Assembly: GCF_000143415.4 (NCBI RefSeq)
Contig: NW_003314299.1
Coordinates: forward strand, 1,424,316 to 1,488,315
Length of the DNA stretch: 64,000 nucleotides
Direction: 5' to 3'
Source: Selaginella moellendorffii
Taxonomy: Eukaryota; Plantae; Lycopodiophyta
The notes beneath the pieces are model-generated. The model made no database searches. It had not been told where the DNA came from and was given only the letters and a program-made list of their open reading frames with translations. A program made the position numbers and the translations under genes. Positions 2,002 through 24,140 of this stretch are shown one piece after another; within the stretch, counting starts at the first letter, position 1; each line of letters begins with the position of its first letter.

Positions 2002-3335
2002 TCACCACATCTCGCAGGGAAGAACATCGTCAATCTCATCCGAGCTCGAGTACCATTCCTCGATATCCCAGCCATCGTCCGAGTAGTGCACGTCGGACAT
2101 GTCGTCGTACAGGTCGAGCATCTGGAACTGGTCATTGAACTTGATGTTGTAGATGACTCTGATCTTCCGGCACCGCTCGGCCATGGCCCCGTCGATCGTC
2201 AAGTTCATGCAGCCCCTCAGATCGAGAAAGTCCAGGCTCTTGCACTTGTCCAGTATCGCGGCCAGCCCCGAGTTCGTGAGCGATCCGTAGCAGAGCTCGA
2301 GGTGTCTCAGCAGCGGCATGTGTGCGGCGATGGCCAGCGCCTCGTCGTCATACTCCTCGGCCACCAAGTTGTTGGTCTGGAAGAAAAAGGACATGTTGCG
2401 GTCGAGGCGCGCGAGCGACTTGCAGGAGCGGCCGATCTGCGCGAGCGCCGTCTTGGAGATCGCTGTGCAGCCGCTGATGTCCAAGTGAGTTATCCTGCTC
2501 AAGCTGGGGGCGATGTTGGCAATGCAGCCGTCCGTGACTTGGCAGAATGGTATGCGAAGAACTTTCAACCCATGACCCCTGCAAGGCCAAAGAATGTATA
2601 GAAAACCATTCATGTCAATAGCATCCAGGCCCTGGCAGAGAGAAGTTTCTTTAAAAACCATTGCTGGTTCCTACAAAACCATGCAAATTCCATGCAAAGC
2701 GACTCAAACGAACCAGGAAGAGGTCAGGGCCGTTTGCTTATCTCTCACCGGGAAGCGTTATCTATGCAATGAGCAATCGGAAAATCAATGCCAGAGACCT
2801 AACGGAATTTGGTTTTTTGCGAGACAATCACTAGCAAAGCAAAGAGCAAAGAAACAAGCTAAAGAAACCCAAGAACACACAAGACAATGAAATAAGAGGG
2901 GAGAAAAAGAAAGAACCTCTTGGCGATGTAATCCACTGGCTCGTCGTTGGCGAGCCGACAGACCGAGAGCTCCTCGAGGCCGCCTCCGCTGCGCTCCACA
3001 ACGAGCTGGACCATCCTGTGGATTACCTCCCAGGGCATGAGCCGGCTCCATTCGTGCAAATCCACAACCCTCCAGCACGTCGGATCCATCGCCGCCTTGC
3101 GCCACGCCTTGCAAACCACCGGGACGCTCCGCATTCGCTCCTCGAGCGGAAGAACAGCGAAAATCCTGGCCAGGGCTTCCGGCAGCATCTCCGACCACTG
3201 CGCCGCGACGCCCCCATCGCTGACGCTCGGTGCTAGCAGCGCCGAGGAGGAGCCGCCGCTGCAAATTTCAGCGCTGCCGCGCTCCATCTCCATCTCCACC
3301 TCCATTGGCATTGCCATCGCCATCGCCATCGCCAC
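2002..3335 (-). CDS. F-box/LRR protein, FBW2/SKIP-like (exons 3335-2917, 2578-2002; about 331 aa)
   Basis: F-box WSEMLPEALARIFAVLPLEERMRSVPVVCKAW, cysteine-containing LRRs (LDISGCT, LDLRGC), DDEALAIA motif and acidic tail. One GT-AG intron joins the two ORFs in frame. Confidence 0.88.
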
Positions 3336-3484
3336 GACACGATGTAAGCGGGGAATCAGCTTTACACAGGGAGACTTAAAAGAAGAGTGTCCTTAACCTT
3401 CCACGTCACCATCAGACGTGGACAATCTGGACACGTGGACGGTCGTGGGCACGCTACTAGGGCTTTCTTAGGGTTCTTGGGGGA
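3336..3484. promoter_or_regulatory. Probable bidirectional promoter (F-box / sirtuin)
   Basis: 149 bp between divergent ATGs. G-box CACGTG near 3433, CCACGTCA near 3400 and a TAGGGTT telobox-like motif near 3469. Confidence 0.55.
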
Positions 3485-4665
3485 ATGGAGCTCGACGAGG
3501 CGCTGCGCAAGGCCGCCGATCTCATCGTCAATGCGTCCTCGGTGGTGGCGTTTACTGGCGCTGGAATTTCGGTGGAATCCGGTAAGAATGCGGCGATCTA
3601 GCTCACAATGCGGGTTATTTCATTCGTCTTAGATGGCGCATTGCTCAATGCTTGTGTCGAGAGGGATTTTTCTAACAATGAATTGCCGCCAGGAATTCCG
3701 GATTTTCGAAGCAGCGGGGGATTGTGGTCAAAGTATGATCCCGAGGTGTATTGTAACTATTCTGTTTTCAAACAAAAGTAAGCGCTGGAGAAAAGAAGTT
3801 TTACTTTCTAGCTTCTTCTCTAACTTTTTTTTTTTTTTTGTTTACTTTTCTGTTCAGGCCCGAGCTCTTTTGGAAGATGGCAGTGGACATGCAAAGCACA
3901 ATGGCAGAAGCTCAGCCCAATCCCGCGCACTATGCGCTTGCCGAGCTTGAAAGTATGGGATATTTGAAACATGTTATAACGCAGAATGTAGATAACTTGC
4001 ACCAGGTACTTGGGATCATCTCTCTCCGTTTTTTTTCTCTCTATTTTGCTTCTCGTATCCGACCAATTGGGAAATCTTTGTAGCGTGCAGGGAGCAACAA
4101 AGTACGTGAGCTGCACGGGAATGGATCAACTGCGTCGTGCATGGTTTGTAGGAGCAAGGTACCAATCTCGGAGGCGATGGATCAGTTGAACTCGGGAAAA
4201 GTAAAAACAAACTTGTCTCTTTTTTTCCCAGCTTTTTCTTACACTGTACATTTGCAGAGCGTTCCGGTGTGCTCTCGTTGTGGAGGAGTTTTAAGAATGG
4301 ACGCGATCCTCTTTGGCGAGCCTTTACAAAGTTCTGTGATGGAAGGCTCGCTGCGACTGGCAATGTTTGCGGAGGTGATGCTTGTGATCGGAACTTCTCT
4401 TGTGGTAGGCACCATGGATGCTTTTGTGTTGTTTGAGCTGAACTTCTCATTTCATGTTTTCGTTTTTTCGTCCGAGCAGGTCTCGCCCGCCAACAGCCTC
4501 GTGCAGCTCTGCAAATCCAACCAAGGAACAATTGTCATTTGTGATCCCAGCCCTGCCAATTCTCATTTGGCTCATGTAATGCTGCGCGGAAACGCAGGCG
4601 AGGTGTTGCCTCGCCTTGTGCAAGCATGCAAAGCGCTGAGAACTAAAGGCAAGGCTCAGATGTAA
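3485..4665 (+). CDS. NAD-dependent protein deacylase (sirtuin), prokaryote-like; exons 3485-3581, 3693-3777, 3858-4005, 4084-4200, 4258-4404, 4480-4665 (259 aa)
   Basis: The six exons splice to 780 nt in frame. Motifs: TGAGISVESGIPDFRS, QPNPAHYALAELE, ITQNVDNLHQRAGS, ELHG, zinc-binding CMVC/CSRC, LFGE, VIGTSLVV, GNAGEVLP. Confidence 0.93.
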
Positions 4666-5891
4666 GAAGCCGGGAAGAAAAAAAGGTTCTTTTTTACACA
4701 GACGTTCCGTCCTTTATGTTTTTCTTGCTAATGATTTGTCCCACAGTGGAAGTCAGAGGGGATGCGTAAAGTAAACGCGGTCCAAACAGGACTAAAGCAA
4801 AAGCCGTGACGAGCCCTTTCAAAGACAAGTTTACTATGCAAAGTTCCATCAATCATACATGCAGGTAAGATAGTTTACTTGGGGGCTTTTTTTTTCCAAA
4901 CTAATCTTGTTTAGTTCCTTGTGTGTTGTTATTGACAGCATGTGTGATTCAGGCACACATCAAATCGCCAGAGACTGTCAACACCGGACAATCTCCTAGA
5001 GCAATACAAACAATGGAAAAAGGAAAGCTTGGAGTAAGCAAGCGTGTTTGGAATCTCTCCTGATGATTTGACAAGGTTGAGAGAGAATTTGATTTTATTT
5101 GCATGGTCTGTAGACAATGTGGAAAAATCTCTGGTCCCTTGGTACGCCCACTTACAAAGTGAAGTATGGCTATGGCCTGAACGTGCTGCTTTTTCACCCC
5201 ACTATGCTATCCGCTATTCCTATTGTTAATCTCTTGAATTTATTGTTTTACTAACGAACTAGTCAAAATATAAATTTGAGGTAGTGGCCTTTTAGCTAAA
5301 ACTCGAAACACGACCTTTTTCCTCTTAACTAATGTTGTCGTTCATTCATTGTTCATCCGTCGATGGACAAAAAGTGATCAATCAAAATGCATCTAAGAAG
5401 TAGACAAACCCTAAAAAAAGATCTCGATTGGAGGCCGCTATAGGAAGTAACAGTGACAAGAAAATCAATTCGCACCCCTATATAAAAAGGCAGTAGAAAT
5501 AAAATAAAGGTAGTTTATAATTGCACGTTTTACAAATTGCTAATACCGTACGCGCAACTGAAGGGCGGCGGCCCAGCCACGTCAGCGCACACCCGCGAAG
5601 AAGAACCCTAATTTCTCAGTGCCAGTGCGTGGCCAGGAGCCGCCATATCCACAGCGGCACGCTGCGCGATATTTAGGGTTGTAGGGTTCCACATTGGGAC
5701 TGGGAGAGCGCTGGGAGTCTCATCTCTAAGGTGAGAATTTCTAGCTCGATCTGGCCGTGACAGGAGATTCGTTGACCTCTGTTTTTTTTTGTGTGCCAGC
5801 TGCGAGCCTTGGAAATCGCGTTTCTACATTTTGCCTGTTCGTCACGCACCAGTGGAGCTCTCGCTTTCGTTGAGCGCTCTTCGGTGGAGTG

Positions 5892-7668
5892 ATGGCAGGC
5901 GTGCTGGTTCCTTCGCAAAATGTGGGGATTTTCCCCCGTTCCTCGCAGTCACTCTCCTTGCCTTCAAAGCTTTGCTACAAGACGCCGAGATCATCGCTAA
6001 GTTTTCGATCGCCCAAGCAAGCGTGTGTCATCGCTGGCCTTGGCTCTTCCTTTTCTCCACTCTTGGCTCTTAAAAGAAGGCTCAAGCCCGGCTCGAGCTC
6101 GCCATCCGTTCCAATGGTCGCTGTTCCACTCCGAACTGTCACTGCTCCTCAAAGCGATGTGGTCGGTGACTTCTCCAAGGAGTTTGATCCTGCCGCTCCA
6201 CCACCATTTTCTCTGGGAGATGTCAGAGCTGCCATTCCAAAGCATTGCTGGGAGAAGAATGTGTGGAGATCGATTAGCTATGTCGTGAGGGACATAGCGG
6301 TGGTTCTCGGACTGGCTGCTGGTGCTGCTTACTTGAATAATTGGCTCGTCTGGCCACTCTACTGGGCTGCCCAAGGCACGATGTTCTGGGCTCTCTTTGT
6401 GCTCGGCCATGACTGGTAAGTTTTTCTCTCCCAGCAATGTTTTTTCTTTCTCGATCTTACGCGTCTTTGATCAGTGGACACGGGAGTTTTTCCAATAACA
6501 AGAAGCTTAACCATGTCTTCGGCCACATTCTCCATTCTTCCATCCTGGTTCCATACCACGGGTGGTACGTATGCTTTTCCATTTCTTGTTTGGCTTAGAG
6601 TTTAAACTTTGTGGAAATCCAGGAGGATAAGCCACCGGACGCATCACCAGAATCACGGCCATGTCGAGAACGACGAGTCCTGGCATCCAGTAAGTCGCCT
6701 GATGCTCTCGCAAGTGGAAACCATTTTGTTTTTCTCTTACCTTACACTGTTCTTCATGTAGATGACCGAGAAGCTCTACAAAGACGCAGATATCTTTACT
6801 CGCTTCGGCCGGTTCCAGCTTCCATGGGTCATGTTTGCTTATCCGCTTTATCTGGTATTACTAGAAGTTCCATTTTGCTTTGCCTCGTTTCTAATCTTTC
6901 TCACGAACAGGCGACGAGGAGTCCGGGTAAAACTGGCTCTCACTTCCATCCGGACAGCTCTCTCTTCGTCCCGAGCGAGAGAAACGACGTGATAACGTCG
7001 ACAGTGTGCTGGTCGGCGATGTTGGCGTTGCTGGCTGCCATGACAGCTGCTGTTGGCCCCGTTTGGATGTTCAAGCTTTACGTCGTACCTTACTTGGTAA
7101 GTTTTCCAGAGTTCTACGCAATCGTTTGATGCTTGTGACCGCAGATCAATATTGTTTGGCTGGATGCTGTGACTTACATGCATCATCACGGGCACGAAGT
7201 CAAGGTTCCGTGGTACAGAGGAAAGGTACTGTGCAAGCTTTGTTTTTTTTTTCAAGGCTCTTTATGCTGGAACTCTAGGAGTGGAACTACATGAGAGGGG
7301 GACTTTCCACCATAGACAGAGACTACGGAGTGATCAACAACATCCACCACGATATCGGCACTCACGTCGTGCATCATTTGTTCCCTCAAATTCCTCACTA
7401 CAATTTGGTGGAAGCTGTGAGTTCATCTTAGCGCTTTTTTGCTTCGGATCGAGCTAATCGTGGTTCTTTTTTCTTTTTTTCTTTTTTTTTTGTTTTCTTG
7501 GTGTAGACCAAAGCGATAAAGCCTGTGCTGGGAAAATACTACAGGGAACCAGAAAAATCTGGCCTGCTTCCCTTGCACTTGTACAAAATTCTTAAGTCGA
7601 GCCTCGAGGAGGACCATTTTGTGCCGAATGAAGGCGACATTGTCTTCTACCAGCGGGACTCCATTTAA
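5892..7668 (+). CDS. FAD7: Omega-3 fatty acid desaturase, plastid type (FAD7/FAD8-like) with transit peptide
   Basis: Ser/Lys/Arg-rich N-terminal extension, FDPAAPPPF, His boxes HDCGH, HRTHH and HVVHH across 8 exons. Confidence 0.9.
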
Positions 7669-9939: not shown

Positions 9940-10935
9940 TCACGAGCTTGCAACTCGAATTTTCACGAATGTGGCTATGTCCTCGCAAAATTTCCTCGCA
10001 TGAGGAAATTTTGGAGCCAAGTAAAAGCCATGGCAGGCCCCCGGGACGAATATGCTCTGGGCCTCCTTTCCAGCGGCTATCAGCTTGTCCACGTACTGTG
10101 CGTGGCGGTCCTGGCCAGGGCACGAACCCCCAATCACCACCAAAGTTGGCGGAATGGCCATGGCCGCCAAATCTAGCGGCGCTTCTCCGCCAAATGGATT
10201 ACACCCCGGATGATCCCTGCTCGCGCCGGGTGGGAGATACGCGCGCCATCGCCACTCCGAGAATCGCTGATTCGCGAAAGGGACATCCGCGAATTCCTTC
10301 TCGGATGGCGTGAGGGATTCGCCTCCAAAGGATGGCTGGATCAAGACCTGGCCGCGAATGACGATGGGGGAGAGATCCTCGCGCGCCAGGGCGAGCTTGG
10401 AGCTGAGATTGTGGACGAGATTGCCGCCGGCGCTATCCCCGACGAGGAATGTGTTGGAGAGATCAAGGAGCGCGTTCTTGGAAGAATGCTGCTGGAAATA
10501 TTTGAGGGCTTCGAAGCCATCGTCGATCGCTGCCGGGTACCTGTGCTCTGGAATGCGGCGGTAGTTCACGGAGATCACGATCGCTGCGCAGGCCGTGGCG
10601 AGATTGCGGCACAGGGCGTCGAAATGGGGCGATGCTGGCGTGCAAAGCGCGAAGAATCCCCCGTGGAAGAAGAAGATTACGGGGAGCGTGGACGAGGAGG
10701 AGCTCGGCGTGAAGATCCGGACCCAGAGATCGGTGTCTTGATCATCGATTGTGAGATCCCGCGCGCTCACTCCCTCCGCGTCGATTGCTGGGGTTTTGCG
10801 GTCGAAGAAATCGGCCGCGCGCCTGCTGAAGCTGCCGTCGCCGCGGAGGATGAATGGAAGCGCCATGAATTTCCAGATGAATGCCGCGATCCTCGCAGCG
10901 AATGGCGTGGCCAATGGCGGATTGGCCATGGACAA
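9940..10935 (-). CDS. HSL-family carboxylesterase / GID1-like protein (intronless)
   Basis: FHGGFF, SVNYRRIPEHRYPAA, GDSAGGN and CHGFY motifs; N-terminal RGDGSFSR..DFFDRK resembles the GID1/CXE lid. Confidence 0.9.
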   Translation of the reverse strand: MSMANPPLATPFAARIAAFIWKFMALPFILRGDGSFSRRAADFFDRKTPAIDAEGVSARDLTIDDQDTDLWVRIFTPSSSSSTLPVIFFFHGGFFALCTPASPHFDALCRNLATACAAIVISVNYRRIPEHRYPAAIDDGFEALKYFQQHSSKNALLDLSNTFLVGDSAGGNLVHNLSSKLALAREDLSPIVIRGQVLIQPSFGGESLTPSEKEFADVPFANQRFSEWRWRAYLPPGASRDHPGCNPFGGEAPLDLAAMAIPPTLVVIGGSCPGQDRHAQYVDKLIAAGKEAQSIFVPGACHGFYLAPKFPHARKFCEDIATFVKIRVASS

Positions 10936-16283: not shown

Positions 16284-18092
16284 TTAATCTGGTGAGCACG
16301 TCGACTTGGCAAGAGCTGGGTCGAGTGGGGTGCTGATTACAAGAACCGTAGAATCCTTGTCTGCAGGATCTAATACTGAGAGAGCCTCTGCTGTCTGTAC
16401 AACATCCCCACGAGAAGCTTCCTCGATGGCGTGAGCGGCTAGTTTCTTCAAGGACAAGGTCGCCACTATAAACAGGTCTCGTGGTTGTTTTGTTGCCTCC
16501 ACCACGTTCACGTTGCCAGCATCTTCTGGGGTGAGCCACTGAAACGAAATAAGAAACTTTTTCGTATGAGCAGGAAGCAAAGACAGCTCCATACTCACCT
16601 TCAAACCTTGCGAACCGACAAGAGCAACTACGAAAGCGCCAGGCCCGCCGACTGCTACGACATTCCCCTTGACAGCAATCACTGTCGAGTGCATCTCCGG
16701 AAGCCACTCATCCTCCTTTGACACAACGAGAAAATACATCGAATACGAAAAACAAAAGAAGAAAATACCCGAATTGTGTGGATGCTTTCGACCTCGTCGT
16801 CTTCCTTTTCCCAGTCCCGCTCGTCTTTTTCGACTTGCATGAGCTCCTGGATCCTGTTTTGCGTCCCTTGCTTTACTCTAGATATACCCATCATGTATGG
16901 ATCACACAAACTTAAGCCTTTTACCTGCGGAAGAGACTTTCAATGGAACGCTTCAGGTTGCCAGTGCAAAAGGCGTCTGACAAATACATGTTGAACAGCC
17001 CCAACCTGTACATACACAGGTCTCTTGCCACTGCGAAACAAAGCCCAGATGAGAGTTCAGTGTAAGAAAGAAATGACTTACGTGGATGTCGGGCTCCACG
17101 ATAGCCATCCGATACAATAACGTGGATTTTCTCATCTCCCACTTGCAATTCTTGAAACAAGTTCTGCAGCGATCACCTTTGAGAACAGCAAACTCAATCA
17201 ACAATGCTCACCAGATTGAAAGACAACTTCTTGTCCATCCTAGCACAAGACAAGCCGCCCTGAACATGAATCTGTGGCCCAAACCCGCGATCAAGCGGGT
17301 AAAACCGCACGCCCCTTGGGAAATCCACCTCCCGCTGCTCTCGCCACCCCATACCTAGCTAGGTTTGTAAAAATTGAACATGTTTAGCGCAATTAGTTAG
17401 GTGGTGGCATCCTCTGTGCTGGAAGAATACAGTGAAATCCTCCCTCTGGCTACATGAGATCAATGAGAAACTTCTTCCATGACGCTTGCCGTCGGAATCT
17501 GTATGGGATTCGCCTTGGCATCCTCTGTGCTGGAAGAATACAGTGAAATCCTCCCTCTGGCTACATGAGATCAATGAGAAACTTCTTCCATATGGGATTC
17601 GCCTTGGCATCTTCCGTATAGCGGCTGCCCATGTACTTGTAGAAGTGTTTCGGAAGAACAGCGCGTCCCAGGAGCAGGGGAACTGGTGTAGATACGGCAT
17701 ATTTTGGTTAGTCCGTAGCGTTCCATTTTGGCACTTCCAATGGAGCCCACGTCATGGGAGTATCTGGTTTGTATTCGTCGTCGGGGAGCTCCGCCCATTC
17801 ATAAAAAATCTGCTTTTCTTGGTCAATAATTTTCCCGTGGACATCCCGACGTGTGGCAATGAGGATCACATAAGCTGCACAAACTTAGTGGGTGCAAACA
17901 TCTCGTCCCAGTATCCAAGCGAGCTCGGGAATCCAGCTCAAGCCCTGTTTCGTATCTCCTTCCTCTGCGTATTAAGATCTCACCATGGATCGAGAGCGCA
18001 TCCGTGACATTGGTCGTTGGTGGTAAGTTCTCCACACACATAGACACACTTGACTTATGCGACTTACTTGAAGCACCAGGATATGAATTCAT
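16284..18092 (-). other. Unidentified multi-exon, lineage-specific gene or pseudogene convergent with the deaminase
   Basis: Chain of minus-strand ORF pieces bounded by GT-AG sites, with Cys-rich segments (CRTCFKNC, CVCTGWGCSTCIC). No recognisable domain. Confidence 0.4.
17405..17611. repeat. Interleaved perfect direct repeats (76 bp x2 and 21 bp x2)
   Basis: 17405-17480 equals 17516-17591; TATGGGATTCGCCTTGGCATC occurs at 17502 and 17591. Confidence 0.9.
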
Positions 18093-18699
18093 TGAAGTAT
18101 GTCTGTTTTTCTTCTGTTTTCTTCTTACGGCTTAGCTAATTTTTCCAGATCGACGAAGGAAAAGAGAGCGCTTTGAGTGCTCTCTGGGTCCATATCAATG
18201 GGCAATTAGTATGGATCTGGAGCAGACATCCCAAAGATTGACAGTGGTGAGAGGCTCAAACATCTCGCCCAGTACTCTGAACAACAAATTTATCAATGCT
18301 TGCAAGTTGTGTGGCCAAGTCGAAAGAGTGGAGTTGAGATGGGATATGTGTTCTACCACCCAGCTGAGATGAGGAACATGATGATAGATAAATTTCAAAG
18401 TTCTTCCAGAAAATCTTTTCTTTGGCATTTTCATTCCATTCCAGGCTATGAGGCTATGAGGTCACAATCAATCAATCTCAATGGCATGTAAAACCAGTGC
18501 CCCGATGCTTTGATATCAACATGCTTAACTGTGCAGAAGGGGATATCCAAGTCACATTTTTGGTTTGCTAAAATGCCCCAAATGTTATGGTGTGGAGGAT
18601 GAACTGGTGAGCTTAGAGAGTGAGTGTGATAGCGAGGAAGGTATTGTGTAGATGGTATTACTGTAGGGATGCTCACTTCATTTCTAGTGAAGTTTGTCA

Positions 18700-21298
18700 A
18701 AGACAACTATTTCAACTACAACTATATGCAGTATACTAAGATTGTAGCTGAGTAGGTGATTAGTCAATTAAAAATGCACTAAATATATGTAGTCAAATTG
18801 CATTATAGATTATGCTATTATGCACAGCATTATGGTAGTTAAGTGGTGACATATTTTTTAAGGAGTGGGATAGTGGTAATCATGTCTAGAATATGACACT
18901 CAAGAAAGTAATGTTGTACTTTTGGATTTAGATTTAAGAAGATTATGATTATATTTTAAGTTTGCACTAATAAAGAAATTATATTCTCTTTCTAATCATT
19001 GGGTGGATGAGTTCAACGAAATTGAAATGGACTTAGACAAATGTATGAGAAGGTTGCAAAGGAGTGTTTATTTGTGGTTTATCAATTTATAACCAGTTAA
19101 AGCTCATGTGTTCCATTAAGTAGAAAAACACTAAATTTACAGTGTATTTAACACTTTTGGATGGAAATCTAGTGCAAGGTATCTCAAAACAATGAATTTT
19201 ACTATAAAGCATCATCAATTAATTAATTTGAGAGATGTTTGGCATGCTTACAGCATGAGGTACTTTATTGCAGTGGGTTGAAAAATATAATACTAATGTA
19301 CACTATCACAAACAAACATGGATATTGGCATATATATATTTCAATAAGACTATTCCAACCCAATAAATGCAAAACTAGATTATAAGCATCAATTTTTATT
19401 TTTACCTCAAACTTCAGACACTTACTAGTATAGTACAGTTGTGCCCCTTACTCACAAACACATTATCACGTTAAACATTAATAATGTGTACCAAAACCAT
19501 ACTTTTATACTTCTCTATAAAGTACTTATAAAAAAAATTAATAATCACTTAAATAATTTTTTATTTTAAAAGTAATGTGGAAAGTTTTGTGATGTGGCAA
19601 GGCATATAAAACCCATCCATACCACATACACTTTAACATTACCAAAAGTGATGTGAATGTGTTATAAAATAACATTTTTGTGTATACAAACAAAAAAACA
19701 TAGCATAAATTTAGACAACACTTTTTAATAGTTATAAGTGATGAATCCATGCTTTTGTCCATATATAAAGAATGAAGTATCTTTGAGATTAAATTTATAA
19801 AAAGAACTCATAATAAATATTTGACTCTTGTAGCATATCATTTTATTTATATCTCCAGAGTTAAAAATAAAATCTATAAACTATATTGTTACTACAAATC
19901 ATATCTAATTACTAAATAAATATAATTAATACTTCACAACTCTAAAATTAATTTTGATGTATCTAAACTCTCATTTAACAAAATCTTATAGTTTTGCAAT
20001 AATGATGCTCATCCAAAAAAATATTAATAACAATATTACACATTAATATATGGTTACAAAGCCTTAAAGTACTAAATGATTGTTTATATATTTATAATTA
20101 AAATTTTATAGTAAAAACTAATCTAATAAAATTTATTCATATAGCTTATAAAATAAATTTAAAATAAACAACTCCTAATATATAATGCATGTAAAAAATA
20201 TTTAATTATTTCCATTATGTAAATAATTGTTTTTTAAAAATATATTAAAATAAAAATATTTAAATTTACTTTTTAAAAATGATGGATTAATATTTACCTC
20301 TAATGGTAGTTAATGACTGAGTTTAAATAGGGAAAATAATAGAATTTAAAAATTCAAGTGCAAAAACACGTCTTTAACTAATCTTTTGTATTGATCTAAA
20401 TTTAATTGTAACCTAAAAACACATTTATAAATTTATATATATGTCTTCTCATAACCGTATCCAGAATAATATTAATAAACAGAGTAAGAAAGTAATTGCA
20501 GATAGTAGCTTTGTTCAATGCCCTAAAATTAACATAAACACGTAAGTTTCATGAATTAAAGCTACATATTAAAAGGTAATTGAAGCCATTCGCACTTGCT
20601 CTTTATTCTTGAAATGTGTTAAATTTAAGTGATGAATACATTCGCACTATGTTTTAAAATAAAGTAAATTACTTTACATTAAAATTTAGGATATTTTTTT
20701 AAAACATTTTGATTCGCACATAGTGCTAACTTTAACACAATGTTTTCACTTTTTAAAACATTCAGACCAATTTTAAAAGATGGGGGGGGGTTCTTTTAAA
20801 CTTAAAATATTTTTAAAAGGAATCTCCAAGATTCCCTAAAGATTCCAGCACCCTAATTAGGGCATTTCAGTTTTTTGCCGCGAGCTCAAGCATTTTATGG
20901 TGGGGGAGCCGATAGCAGTCATCGCTCTAGGGTTAGATCTTGTTGGGGATTCGGTAGAGGAAGGAGGAGCAACTGATTTTGGGGAAAGAGGAGCTGTAGG
21001 GTTTAACACGAGTTCGGGGCAGTGGCATACAGCAAGGAGGTGCTGCTCGTGGAGTGAGGAGCAACCGTGGTGGAGGAGCATCTGGGGCTAAAGGAAAAGC
21101 ACCAAGCCCAAATGTTGCTCGAGGAGGTAGGCTGCCTCAGGGCCAAGGCCGTGGAAATGCCAATCTCTCGAATCTTGGCCTATTTTGAAGACATTTTGAA
21201 ATAAGTCAAGTTTTATAAATATAAAATTTTTAAATTTCAATTTAAAACTTAAATAAGCAAACAAAATGATAAAATTATAACAAAAGTTTTTCAATATA
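18700..21298. other. AT-rich, CpG-poor non-coding island (probably old TE-derived), with a small GC-rich patch at about 20860-21180
   Basis: Visibly AT-dominated sequence that contrasts with the genic flanks; no credible ORFs. Confidence 0.55.
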
Positions 21299-24140
21299 AC
21301 TTTATGAGGTCCAAGTTTATAGTTATGATGCCATATACTAATATTAGCATTGTGGGATTTTAATTACCCTTAGATTGATTTTAATCTGGACCATTCACTT
21401 CTATATATAAACTAGGTTTTTGGGCTAATTGATATATATTTTATATTATCTTTCCATATTCCATGCACTAATATTGATGAAAATGAGGGGTAATTTTGAT
21501 TGTCCCTAATGAGTGCTAGAATTTGGGATTTTGGTTTAAATTTAACTTTTGCATTGTCTTGTCTAGATCTCCTTTTTCTTATTGCTTTCTCAATTTTTTT
21601 TCTTTTGCTCTTTTTTTTAATTCATCTTCATGGTAGAGCAACAACCTACTTATCTTTTGACTCTAGAGTAATAGTTGGTACAATTGTTCGATGTTATGTG
21701 GTTGCAATTGAACACCTAAACTCAATTGATAGTAACATTCACGACACATAATACAATTCCTTCTACTCTTATTACTAATCTTCATATTTGGTTAAAATTC
21801 TTCCGTGGGAATCTTAGGGATGATGTGTACCATTGATTCAATCACTTCATGGTAATTGCCACATATCATTCATAGGATGATGCTCAACATTTGTGTGAGT
21901 TTCCCATGTCTTTCTAAGGGATGACACTATAATGGTATAATGGTTTAAGTATACCTACTCGTGAGGATTGAAGTATTATTTCGGATGTGTTCAAGTTCAC
22001 ATTTGGATATGTTAACGATTGTGATGATGCCTTTTAATAATTGCATCATCTTTGTTAAGGGCAATCTAGGGTGGTGATGCAATTTGGCATTTGTTTTTAA
22101 AGCCTTTTGTTTTGTGTAAAGCCAAATATGTCACAACGGATCAAGCTAGGAATATTGTGGCTAGCACTTTGTCAATATCTGGTAAAAGTTGTGCATGCAC
22201 TTGTTTCTGCCACCCTTGACAATGCCCTTCGCTGGGTACAATATTATGAAATGTCGCCTCTTCCACTTTTTGTTACACATCCTTTAACTCCACTTCATGT
22301 GGGAGATGGTTTTGTTTCAATGGAAGTTGATGCCACTAGTTATATTGCTCGGTGGGCTTTGAAGCTTCAGATATATGATTTTGATGGTGTTCATTTCCCA
22401 AGGATTCTATGGCTAATATTGATGCCCTTTCTGCAGCTCTTCTTCCGTTCTTACTCTCTTCTCATTTTTTGACAACCTATTGTTGTAGTATTTATGGATT
22501 TTTTAGATGAGGAATTTGTGCCATCGATGGTTGTTATACTTAATATTTAATGTCCACAAGGTGCAAAGTAAGATTTACCTTCTTTTAACGAGATTCGTGA
22601 GGCTCAAAAGATTAAACTATGAATTTGAAAATTTCGAGATAGATTTAAAAATCTTGCATCACTTGCTGATGACTTGCCCTTTTAAAATTTACATTTTCAA
22701 TATCACCTTAAGGATAGTCTTCTTTATTTTTTGGGGATGGATCTTGATGATTATTTACAATTGATGGTGCTTTCTATTTTTATTCTACACTTTTTCTATG
22801 CCTACCATAATTCTTCTATTCTTGGTTGGGACATCATCATGTGATTAAGAAGTTGTGTAGGTCTTTTTATTAGCTGGAGATGCGACGTAATGTTATCTAG
22901 TATGTGCATAGTTGCATTTGGTGCTAAGTTTGTAATACTCCCCCTTGGGCTGTGGAAGGACGATTAAAATTAATTGTAGTTTTTTGTCCATTTGAGTTAG
23001 TGACATTTAATTTGATAGGACCTTTTCCACAATTAAAATTTAGCAATGAGTATGTTATTAGTGCTTCTGACTACTTGACTTGCTGGGTGAAAGGTGATGC
23101 TCTTGCTAGCACATTTACAATTGCTGTTAGATATTTCCTCCTCAATCAAATAGTGTTCTAGCATTCTTGTCTAGAGTGGAGTTTTTTTGAAAAATGGTCC
23201 CGCATTTATGGTTGAGGCATTTTATATTTTGACATTTTGATTGGGGATATGCCACACTTTCACGAATGCTTATCATCCACAATCAAACAATTTGGTAGAA
23301 CAGCTTGTTTGAACCTTTAAAGGGATGATTGCAAAGTATGTGAACTTTTAATATTCAAATTGGAATGATTATTTGCCATCTCTTTAGTATACGTATATCA
23401 CAGGGGTGCAAAATTTTGTTAATGCTTCACTATATAAATTCTTATATGGTTATAACATAATATTGCCAATAGAGTTGGGTTTACCATTGCGATTGCCATG
23501 GTCTGCCAATACTAAGCCATGGGATCAATATTTGACAAACATTCTTCCACTTGTTTGAGTAGAGTTTGCCGAATACTTAGGTTGTATACAAATTCAACAA
23601 TAATAGCATTACAACTCCATTATTATTCATTTGCGGAGTACAAAATGAATGATTTGGTGTTAGTATGTTTTCCCCATTTTATCGTATTTGGTTTATTTAA
23701 AGAGTTCCTTGCTCAGTAGAAAAGTCCATATCAAATGTTATAGTAAATTGGACTAATGGTTTATGAGGTTTGGCATGACATCTAGCAAGCTGATCCTCCA
23801 AAAATTGTGCATGTATAGTGGCTAAAATGTTTTGTACTAAAGGATCAAGAACAATTAACACCATTTACAAATCCATTGATGCTTCCTCTTAATGTTCTTC
23901 TAAATCCCAGCCCATCCATAAAAGAACCTTGACAGTATTCCATCATTTTAAGAGGAGGGGATGATATAAGGTCTAAGTGTATAACTATAATGCTATATAT
24001 TAATATTAGTATAGTGGGATTTTGGTTGCCATTAAATTGGTTTCAATTCGGAGTATTTGCTCTTATATATAAGTTAGAGTTTTTGGGGTAATTGATATGC
24101 ACATTTCTTGTATTCTCTTTCCATATTCCATGGACTCACA
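21299..24140 (+). mobile_element. Degenerate, internally deleted Ty3/gypsy LTR retrotransposon
   Basis: Diverged ~175-bp LTRs at about 21299-21471 and 23962-24140 (TG...CA); polypurine tract AAGAGGAGGGGA at 23950-23961. RNase H remnant ARWALKLQIYDF. Integrase remnants PFELVTFNLIGPFP...DYLTCWV, AYHPQSN.LVE and WNDYLP, broken by stops. Confidence 0.85.

What the first reader, a model, noticed from the sequence alone, without database searches (positions are those of the whole stretch)
3485..4665. Archaeal/bacterial-type sirtuin with five spliceosomal introns
Seen: a compact 259-aa sirtuin with no transit peptide or extensions, and intact NAD-binding, catalytic His and Zn motifs. Established: angiosperms have only SRT1 (class IV) and SRT2 (class II). 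The segments GLWSKYDPE, PNPAHYALAELE.MG..K.VITQN.D.LHQRAGS..V.ELHG and G.AGEVLP closely recall Archaeoglobus Sir2-Af2-type prokaryotic sirtuins. It lacks the YxxR desuccinylase motif of SIRT5/CobB (here FWKMAVDM), and the conserved RP(D/N) reads RMD. Inference: a third plant sirtuin class, acquired by old horizontal transfer or lost in seed plants, with unknown acyl substrates. The introns argue against contamination.
Basis: partly seen in the sequence, partly recalled or inferred. Interest (0 to 1): 0.75.

Follow-up and report, generated by a model that had tools for sequence, protein, structure and literature searches.

The report
Archaeal-type third sirtuin in a spikemoss
This spikemoss has a working, intron-containing gene for a small NAD-dependent protein deacylase of the archaeal Sir2-Af2 type; green algae, mosses, lycophytes and ferns share it, but no seed-plant copy turned up, so it is a third plant sirtuin that flowering-plant research has missed.

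Summary
Window 3485-4665 (+) carries six exons and five GT-AG introns encoding a 259-aa sirtuin. Assembled contigs from four public runs, probably RNA, show all five junctions spliced as predicted.

The protein differs at one residue from the public Selaginella moellendorffii entry SELMODRAFT_271141, which is named "hypothetical protein".

It is neither SRT1/class IV nor SRT2/class II. Its best solved relative is Archaeoglobus Sir2-Af2 (220 bits). SIRT4 scores 106 and SIRT6 scores 91. The predicted structure also matches Sir2-Af2 best.

Orthologues occur in lycophytes, ferns, mosses, Zygnematophyceae, Klebsormidium and a chlorophyte. None from a seed plant appeared. Four of five intron positions and phases are identical from Klebsormidium to Selaginella, and two are shared with the chlorophyte. 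The gene is therefore old in green plants. It is not contamination or recent transfer, and seed plants most likely lost it.

In trees, the plant proteins sit in a eukaryotic clade with dinoflagellates and protists. The nearest prokaryotes are mostly Asgard archaea, with moderate support.

It lacks the succinyl-recognising Tyr/Arg pair. I predict a cytosolic or nuclear deacetylase, possibly also a long-chain deacylase.

The scan noted the same thing on another piece of this genome (s1-422305). I found no paper describing this class.

The parts
3457..3484 (+). 5' UTR (minimum extent)
   Evidence: Transcript contigs begin at 3457-3478. No ATG lies upstream of 3485 in this stretch.
3485..3581 (+). 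Exon 1: start codon, helix 1, first strand and the start of the NAD-binding GAGIS motif (residues 1-32 plus 1 nt)
   Evidence: Model. Junction 3581|3693 seen in runs X2, X3 and X7.
3582..3692 (+). Intron 1, 111 nt, GT-AG, phase 1
   Evidence: Same position and phase in Ceratodon, Diphasiastrum, Klebsormidium and Closterium.
3693..3777 (+). Exon 2, 85 nt (GIPDFRSSGGLWSKYDPE...)
   Evidence: This exon is 85 nt in all five streptophytes.
3778..3857 (+). Intron 2, 80 nt, GT-AG, phase 2
3858..4005 (+). Exon 3, 148 nt. It holds A69 and M72, the positions of the CobB/SIRT5 Tyr and Arg, plus PNPAH and TQNVDNLHQ.
   Evidence: Pfam SIR2, 3.1e-10; Sir2-Af2, 8.4e-13. This exon is 148 nt in all five streptophytes.
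4006..4083 (+). Intron 3, 78 nt, GT-AG, phase 0
   Evidence: The position is shared with all streptophytes examined and with the chlorophyte Cymbomonas.
4084..4200 (+). Exon 4: catalytic His121 (codon 4114-4116) and the first CxxC of the zinc site. Val131 (codon 4144-4146) is the single difference from SELMODRAFT_271141.
4201..4257 (+). Intron 4, 57 nt, GT-AG, phase 0, inside the variable zinc-module loop
   Evidence: It is phase 0 in the same loop in the other streptophytes, but the alignment there is ambiguous.
4258..4404 (+). Exon 5: second CxxC, RMD (in place of the usual R/K-P-D) and the FGE loop
4405..4479 (+). Intron 5, 75 nt, GT-AG, phase 0
   Evidence: The position is shared with all streptophytes examined and with Cymbomonas.
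4480..4665 (+). Exon 6: VSPAN, GNAGEVLP, C-terminal helix and the stop codon at 4663-4665
4666..4864 (+). 3' UTR, continuing past 4938. It holds an alternatively spliced intron at 4686-4746 and a second intron at 4865-4938.
   Evidence: Loose ends and contig pieces, read against the sequence.
3354..3456 (.). Short region of about 100 bp shared with the divergently transcribed F-box/LRR gene; presumably a bidirectional promoter
   Evidence: No contig covers it; contigs of the neighbour end at 3350-3353 and the longest sirtuin contig starts at 3457. F-box-like domain in ORF 2859-3335 on the - strand. The promoter role is inferred.

Best explanation
This is a genuine, transcribed nuclear gene of Selaginella. 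It encodes a minimal Sir2-Af2-type sirtuin that consists of the catalytic core only. It belongs to a eukaryotic clade that was already present, with introns, in the common ancestor of green plants. Chlorophyte and streptophyte algae, mosses, lycophytes and ferns keep it. Seed plants lost it, which is why plant sirtuin biology knows only SRT1 and SRT2.

Inferred mechanism: an NAD+-dependent lysine deacylase. His121 acts as the general base. NAD+ binds through GAGIS...GIPDFR and QNVD. A four-cysteine zinc module is present.

The acyl pocket carries Ala69 and Met72 where CobB and SIRT5 have the Tyr and Arg that bind succinyl or malonyl. It should therefore act on uncharged acyl groups, such as acetyl and perhaps long-chain fatty acyl as in Sir2-Af2, and not on acidic ones.

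With no targeting peptide, it most likely works in the cytosol and/or nucleus.
For: Shown here:
- Gene model and splicing.
- One-residue difference from S. moellendorffii SELMODRAFT_271141.
- Plant-type neighbours: an F-box/LRR gene, a DUF3474 N-terminal domain (which I know from plant omega-3 desaturases) and an Abhydrolase_3 esterase.
- Best sequence and fold match is Sir2-Af2. The AF2 model has mean pLDDT 94.9.
- It reaches the NCBIfam NF001753 'NAD-dependent protein deacylase' cut-off, 264 against 243.
- Catalytic, NAD and Zn residues are conserved.
- Named orthologues at 50-61% identity: Diphasiastrum, Ceratopteris, Pteridium, Adiantum, Ceratodon, Sphagnum, Closterium, Mesotaenium, Klebsormidium and Cymbomonas. 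No seed plant appears.
- Introns 1, 2, 3 and 5 have identical position and phase in Selaginella, Diphasiastrum, Ceratodon, Closterium and Klebsormidium. Introns 3 and 5 are also in Cymbomonas.
- In the careful trees embryophytes score 99/88-90 and green plants plus dinoflagellates 100/99.
- CobB Y92 and R95 align to A69 and M72.

From papers:
- Sir2Af1 prefers succinyl and Sir2Af2 prefers myristoyl (PMC10652111, citing Ringel 2014). PDB 1ma3 is Af2 with an acetyl peptide and 4twj is Af2 with a myristoyl peptide.
- Arabidopsis and soybean have two sirtuin genes (PMC4120686).
Against: No enzyme assay or localisation data exist, so activity, substrate range and compartment are inferred.

The Pro of the usual (R/K)-P-(D/N) is Met here (Met or Leu across streptophytes). 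The effect on the substrate-binding loop is unknown.

Absence from seed plants rests on annotated or predicted proteins in one database search limited to the 8000 candidates sharing most words. Genomes were not searched for remnants.

No named liverwort, hornwort or Physcomitrium orthologue was seen, so there may be several losses or sampling gaps.

Within land plants the gene tree does not follow the species tree exactly (mosses group with ferns, 99/79), as expected for a 260-column protein.

Classes I, II and IV could not be put in the tree, because no tool supplied their sequences. Their exclusion rests on score gaps, not on phylogeny.
Confidence: 0.75

Rival explanations
1. Ancient horizontal transfer. 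A prokaryotic Af2-type sirtuin gene, from an Asgard archaeon or a bacterium, entered an early green-lineage ancestor or another protist. It gained introns and was later passed between eukaryotes, for example from green algae to dinoflagellates. On this view it was not inherited from the first eukaryotes.
For: Distribution among eukaryotes is patchy: green plants, dinoflagellates, Phalansterium and unnamed protists. Animals, fungi and seed plants do not appear in the hit lists. The dinoflagellate group is sister to green plants at 100/99, a pattern often produced by algal gene transfer. The protein is 45-50% identical to many prokaryotic enzymes. Support for one eukaryotic clade falls to 74/81 when more Asgard rows are added.
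Against: All 28 eukaryotic rows form one clade in both careful trees (97/89 and 74/81; 78% of bootstrap trees in tree 2). No prokaryote is nested among them. The shared introns put the gene before the chlorophyte-streptophyte split. Any transfer would therefore be extremely old and hard to tell from vertical descent followed by losses.
Confidence: 0.25
2. Contamination or a recent bacterial or archaeal insertion in the assembly.
For: The closest solved structures and many top hits are prokaryotic.
Against: The gene has five spliced GT-AG introns, at positions conserved in other streptophytes. It lies between typical plant genes. The spliced form occurs in four independent studies. Orthologues lie on chromosome-scale plant scaffolds.
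Confidence: 0.01
3. A divergent copy of plant SRT2 (class II) or SRT1 (class IV).
For: Those are the only sirtuin classes described for plants (PMC4120686, PMC2936527).
Against: PDB scores are Af2 220 bits against SIRT4 106 and SIRT6 91. NF003738 scores 147 against a cut-off of 305. The fold ranking puts Af2, Af1, Sir2Tm and PfSir2A ahead of SIRT5 and SIRT4.
Confidence: 0.02

Closest known systems
Archaeoglobus fulgidus Sir2-Af2 (PDB 1ma3, 1s7g, 1yc2, 4twj)
   Same: Same size: 259 aa against 253 aa, aligned end to end. It is about 43% identical in the structural alignment and is the best hit by sequence (220 bits) and by fold (TM 0.86-0.90). It has the same catalytic, NAD and Zn residues. A small residue and a Met sit where CobB and SIRT5 have Tyr and Arg (Af2 has Ser and Met, Selaginella has Ala and Met).
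   Different: The plant gene is a eukaryotic nuclear gene with five introns. It has R-M-D where the enzymes aligned here mostly have (R/K)-P-(D/N), and VSPAN where the prokaryotes mostly have VYPAA. The activity of the plant protein is untested.
Asgard archaeal SIR2 proteins (Loki/Promethearchaeota, Hodarchaeales, Heimdall, Thor); LoSIR2a-c in bioRxiv 10.64898/2026.07.02.735847
   Same: They are the nearest named prokaryotic relatives by score (45-50% identity) and in trees. The sister clade scores 99/95, and the Asgard-dominated 65-row clade scores 93/79. The preprint shows that Loki SIR2 deacetylates histone tails with NAD+, and that Loki and Hod SIR2 restore silencing in yeast.
   Different: I could not map the tested LoSIR2 paralogues onto my tree rows. 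The join of eukaryotes to their Asgard sister clade has only 76/81 support. One actinobacterial MAG clade sits inside the same group.
Plant SRT1 (class IV, SIRT6/7-like) and SRT2 (class II, SIRT4-like)
   Same: They share the Sir2 catalytic core and occur in the plant kingdom.
   Different: Scores are far lower: SIRT6 91 bits and SIRT4 106 bits against 220 for Af2. SRT2 is mitochondrial (PMC4120686, citing Konig 2014). This protein has no presequence. It is absent from the seed plants where SRT1 and SRT2 were defined.
Class III desuccinylases: E. coli CobB, human SIRT5, Sir2-Af1
   Same: Af1 is the second-best PDB hit (183 bits). All are compact, core-only enzymes.
   Different: The Tyr-x-x-Arg pair for acidic acyl groups is absent (A69 and M72 against CobB Y92 and R95). 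NF001755, which I take to be the E. coli CobB-type model, scores 105 against a cut-off of 318.
Sulfolobus Saci_0381 type archaeal sirtuins (PMC10652111)
   Same: That paper groups them with Af-type archaeal sirtuins. They prefer short-chain and long-chain acyl groups over acidic ones, which is the specificity predicted here.
   Different: They were not compared by sequence here. The paper calls all of these 'class III', so class names differ between authors.

Membership tests
Sirtuin / Sir2 family (Pfam PF02146) | Rossmann NAD-binding motifs GAGxS...GIPxFR and QN(V/I)D | tested here: met
   G25-A26-G27-I28-S29, G33-I34-P35-D36-F37-R38 and Q103-N104-V105-D106. These are invariant or nearly so across 32 aligned relatives.
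Sirtuin / Sir2 family (Pfam PF02146) | Catalytic histidine in the (E)xHG motif | tested here: met
   E119-L120-H121-G122; the His codon is at window 4114-4116.
Sirtuin / Sir2 family (Pfam PF02146) | Zinc module with two CxxC pairs | tested here: met
   C129/C132 and C154/C157.
Sirtuin / Sir2 family (Pfam PF02146) | Profile match and sirtuin fold | tested here: met
   Four exons hit PF02146 at consecutive profile positions; three of them reach the gathering score on their own. The AF2 model (pLDDT 94.9) matches more than 50 sirtuin chains at probability 1.00.
Sirtuin / Sir2 family (Pfam PF02146) | NAD+-dependent lysine deacylation | not testable with these tools
   Needs a recombinant enzyme assay.
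Sir2-Af2-type prokaryotic sirtuins (NCBIfam NF040867 / NF001753) | Closer to Af2 than to any other solved sirtuin | tested here: met
   Af2 220 bits, then Af1 183, Sir2Tm 159, PfSir2A 149. Foldseek ranks 1-7 are all Af2 chains.
Sir2-Af2-type prokaryotic sirtuins (NCBIfam NF040867 / NF001753) | Reaches the curated family score | tested here: inconclusive
   The NF001753 subfamily cut-off is met (264 against 243). The NF040867 equivalog cut-off is not met (287 against 320). This fits a separate eukaryotic branch of the family.
Sir2-Af2-type prokaryotic sirtuins (NCBIfam NF040867 / NF001753) | No Tyr/Arg pair for acidic acyl groups | tested here: met
   A69 and M72; Af2 has Ser and Met at the same columns.
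Class III SIRT5/CobB desuccinylases | Y-x-x-R in the acyl pocket | tested here: not met
   CobB Y92 and R95 align to A69 and M72.
Plant SRT2 / class II (SIRT4-like) | Highest similarity to SIRT4-type enzymes; mitochondrial presequence | tested here: not met
   SIRT4 (5oj7) scores 106 bits against 220 for Af2. NF003738 scores 147 against a cut-off of 305. There is no N-terminal extension.
Plant SRT1 / class IV (SIRT6/7-like) | Highest similarity to SIRT6/7-type enzymes | tested here: not met
   SIRT6 scores 91 bits.
Vertically inherited green-plant gene | Orthologues across green lineages with shared intron positions | tested here: met
   Introns 1, 2, 3 and 5 are identical in five streptophytes. 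Introns 3 and 5 are also in a chlorophyte. The green plus dinoflagellate clade scores 100/99.

The most novel reading that the evidence does not exclude
The plant protein may be a surviving member of a further ancestral eukaryotic sirtuin class that descends directly from the SIR2 of the Asgard archaeal host. On this reading animals, fungi and seed plants lost it, while non-seed plants, green algae, dinoflagellates and some amoebozoan or other protists kept it. Like the Loki and Hod SIR2 enzymes reported in 2026, it could act on histone tails. Non-seed plants would then carry a chromatin eraser of archaeal descent that flowering plants lack.
Probability: 0.3. Interest if true: 0.75.

Novelty: new member of a known kind. 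Interest (0 to 1): 0.5.

Why it matters
Plant sirtuin biology is built on two genes, SRT1 and SRT2, because it was worked out in seed plants. This result shows that mosses, lycophytes, ferns and streptophyte algae carry a third, archaeal-type sirtuin that is expressed and highly conserved. Lysine-acylation control in those lineages cannot simply be extrapolated from Arabidopsis.

It also gives a dated example of gene loss on the stem of seed plants. It offers a compact 259-aa, core-only enzyme for biochemical work.

If the link to Asgard SIR2 enzymes holds, it provides a living eukaryotic counterpart for the Asgard histone deacetylases now under study. That would bear on which sirtuins the first eukaryotes inherited.

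Tried and rejected
Searching the spliced model: following the operators' rule, I sent only single exons by reference and the stop-free read-through window:4084-4662 to search tools. The joined 259-aa model was never handed to a search, fold or database tool. It was used only inside scripts, for alignments and trees. The public protein P0001, which differs at one residue (A131 in place of V131), stood in for it.

Full-class phylogeny: I could not build a tree with classes I, II and IV. No tool supplied those sequences and I did not type them from memory. E. coli CobB was the only outgroup, and it is a long branch of 2.7-3.2.

Its 80 loci are a sample, not the nearest relatives.

Sister clade: I tried to name the unnamed prokaryotic clade nearest the eukaryotes (P0169, P0187, P0193). 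Neighbouring genes gave no taxonomy: DUF1156, restriction-modification methylases and a GH106 rhamnosidase-like protein. A search with P0169 brought in only Asgard-labelled named relatives. In tree 2 the group joins the Loki/Promethearchaeota clade.

Literature: ten searches found no paper describing this plant class. One search was badly framed and returned irrelevant papers. The library lacks most subscription journals, so a prior mention elsewhere cannot be excluded.

Other points: Rfam found nothing in the window. The large representative protein search, complex prediction and atlas search were not used, because nothing rested on them.

Full report
**What is there**

Reading window 3000-5200 and joining candidate exons in a script gives a clean model on the + strand. 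The exons are 3485-3581, 3693-3777, 3858-4005, 4084-4200, 4258-4404 and 4480-4665. All five introns are GT..AG and 57-111 nt long. The CDS is 780 nt and encodes 259 residues.

Four of the six exon translations hit Pfam SIR2 on their own, at consecutive profile positions. Exon 3 alone finds Archaeoglobus Sir2-Af2 at 8.4e-13.

Contigs from four public runs in four studies carry the spliced form with exactly these five junctions. One run (X1) keeps intron 1 and differs at the intron-4 acceptor. The tool only guesses that the runs are RNA, but clean removal of all five introns fits that.

The transcript starts about 7-28 nt upstream of the ATG. It continues into a 3' UTR with two further introns, at 4686-4746 (alternative) and 4865-4938.

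**Identity and organism**

A stop-free read-through of exons 4-6 (window:4084-4662) found the public protein P0001, SELMODRAFT_271141 of Selaginella moellendorffii. It is named 'hypothetical protein' in NCBI and 'Deacetylase sirtuin-type domain-containing protein' in UniRef. It differs from my model only at residue 131, Ala instead of Val. Earlier notes on this genome also call it a spikemoss.

The neighbours are ordinary plant genes:
- a divergently transcribed F-box/LRR gene at 2002-3335 (-);
- a DUF3474 domain at 5889-6419, which I know as the N-terminal domain of plant omega-3 desaturases;
- an Abhydrolase_3 carboxylesterase at 9940-10935 (-).

**Which sirtuin**

With P0001 against all PDB sequences, the scores in bits are:
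- Sir2-Af2: 220 (3.9e-64), aligned end to end (residues 4-253 against 2-251)
- Sir2-Af1: 183
- Sir2Tm: 159
- PfSir2A: 149
- SIRT5: 115
- SIRT4: 106
- SIRT3: 100
- yeast Sir2: 92
- SIRT6: 91

In NCBIfam the best models are the archaeal NF040867 (287 bits, under its cut-off of 320) and the subfamily NF001753 (264 bits, over its cut-off of 243). The class II-like NF003738 scores 147 against 305. NF001755, which I take to be the E. coli CobB type, scores 105 against 318.

An AlphaFold2 model built on 32 relatives has mean pLDDT 94.9. Its seven best Foldseek matches are all Sir2-Af2 chains, at TM 0.80-0.90. Af1, Sir2Tm, PfSir2A, SIRT5 and SIRT4 follow.

So the protein is neither SRT1 (class IV) nor SRT2 (class II).

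**Active site**

All NAD-binding residues, the QNVD motif, His121 and the four zinc cysteines are present.

In an alignment that includes E. coli CobB (taken from the K-12 record), CobB Y92 and R95 fall on Ala69 and Met72. Every eukaryotic and Asgard relative examined also lacks the pair. Af2 has Ser and Met at these columns.

A paper in the library reports that Sir2Af1 prefers succinyl and Sir2Af2 prefers myristoyl (PMC10652111, citing Ringel 2014). PDB holds Af2 with an acetyl peptide (1ma3) and with a myristoyl peptide (4twj). From this I infer activity on uncharged acyl groups. That step is inference, not a result.

The Pro is also replaced in some relatives: Heimdall has KSD, Thor has KSE and Phalansterium has KID.

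**Distribution**

The full-length search and cluster look-ups give orthologues at 50-61% identity in:
- lycophyte: Diphasiastrum;
- ferns: Ceratopteris, Pteridium, Adiantum;
- mosses: Ceratodon, Sphagnum;
- Zygnematophyceae: Closterium (two strains), Mesotaenium;
- Klebsormidium, where it is named 'putative sirtuin';
- the chlorophyte Cymbomonas.

No seed-plant protein appears among the 120 best of 8000 scored candidates, although the sources (NCBI, UniRef) should hold many seed-plant proteomes. Named liverwort, hornwort and Physcomitrium hits are also missing.

Published counts give two sirtuin genes in Arabidopsis and soybean (PMC4120686) and in Chlamydomonas (PMC2936527, PMC10227436).

**Introns**

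I fetched the genomic loci of five orthologues and mapped each annotated protein back onto its DNA.
- Selaginella, Diphasiastrum, Ceratodon, Closterium and Klebsormidium all have five introns.
- Exon 2 is 85 nt and exon 3 is 148 nt in all five.
- Introns 1 (phase 1), 2 (phase 2), 3 (phase 0) and 5 (phase 0) fall at identical alignment columns.
- Intron 4 is phase 0 in the variable zinc-module loop in all five.
- Cymbomonas has nine introns. It shares introns 3 and 5, and has one a single codon away from intron 1.

The gene and part of its intron set therefore predate the chlorophyte-streptophyte split. This rules out contamination and recent transfer. Loss is the simplest reading of the absence from seed plants.

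**Trees**

FastTree on 311 rows and two IQ-TREE analyses under LG+C20 (PMSF) on 102 rows each agree on the main groupings.

In careful tree 1:
- embryophytes score 99/88;
- green plants plus a dinoflagellate group (Gymnodinium smaydae and two others) score 100/99;
- all 28 eukaryotic rows form one clade at 97/89.

The second eukaryotic subclade holds Phalansterium (Amoebozoa), an MMETSP transcript and three environmental sequences. Two of their contigs carry a gelsolin-repeat gene or a C2H2 zinc-finger gene next to the sirtuin, so they are eukaryotic.

In careful tree 2, with more named Asgard rows:
- eukaryotes are one clade at 74/81 (78% of bootstrap trees);
- their sister is a 25-row clade (99/95) of Loki/Promethearchaeota, Hermod, Hod and Thor sequences plus an unnamed prokaryotic group;
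- the join of eukaryotes to that sister clade is supported at only 76/81;
- with Heimdall, Hodarchaeales and one actinobacterial MAG clade, they form a 65-row group at 93/79;
- all other bacteria and non-Asgard archaea in the tree lie outside that group.

Caveats: the rows were chosen from best hits. The only outgroup is a long CobB branch. Support near the eukaryote stem is moderate. An Asgard origin is therefore a lead, not a result.

Two preprints give context. One shows that Loki SIR2 deacetylates histone tails in vitro, and that Loki and Hod SIR2 rescue yeast sir2 mutants, while declining to infer ancestry (bioRxiv 10.64898/2026.07.02.735847). The other reports an Asgard sister group for a different class, SIRT7 (bioRxiv 10.1101/2021.11.30.470311).

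**Verdict**

The family itself (Af2-type sirtuins) is well known. The protein is already in public databases without a specific name, and the scan noted the same thing on another piece of this genome (s1-422305). I therefore rate it a new member of a known kind.

What is new is the recognition of a conserved, expressed, intron-bearing eukaryotic branch of that family in non-seed plants, and its possible Asgard affinity. I found no paper describing it, within the limits of the library.

Noticed in passing
window 2002-3335 (-) and 3354-3456: An F-box/LRR gene is transcribed away from the sirtuin. The two transcript starts are only about 100 bp apart, which suggests a shared bidirectional promoter.
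   Followed up: partly
window 4686-4746 and 4865-4938: The sirtuin transcript has two introns in its 3' UTR, downstream of the stop codon. The first is spliced in some contigs and retained in another. Introns in that position can mark a transcript for nonsense-mediated decay.
   Followed up: partly
window 5889-6419 (+) and 9940-10935 (-): The downstream neighbours look like an omega-3 fatty-acid desaturase with a long N-terminal leader (DUF3474, 2.3e-27) and an intronless Abhydrolase_3 carboxylesterase of 331 aa.
   Followed up: partly
P0021, P0027, P0038 (dinoflagellate group): The dinoflagellate members have lost three of the four zinc cysteines (CMVS and RHPET in place of the two CxxC pairs). 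They also carry a ~15-residue insert after the acyl-pocket helix and a ~12-residue insert in the zinc-module loop. They may be structurally or functionally altered sirtuins.
   Followed up: no
L089 (Cymbomonas tetramitiformis, P0218): The annotated protein lacks the second CxxC and the FGE loop. This is probably a gene-model error in a 14.6-kb gene with nine introns, two of them GC-AG.
   Followed up: no
L086 (Diphasiastrum) and the Ceratopteris gene of P0002: The same six-exon gene spans 40.6 kb in Diphasiastrum and about 104 kb in Ceratopteris, against 1.2 kb in Selaginella. That is a 30- to 90-fold difference in intron size with unchanged intron positions.
   Followed up: partly
L082 and L090 (unnamed prokaryotic relatives P0169, P0252): In these contigs the sirtuin gene lies next to DUF1156 / N6-methylase / Type ISP restriction-modification genes.
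   Followed up: no
window 18000-24000: There is a marked AT-rich block (GC 0.30-0.34, against about 0.47-0.53 elsewhere in the window).
   Followed up: no
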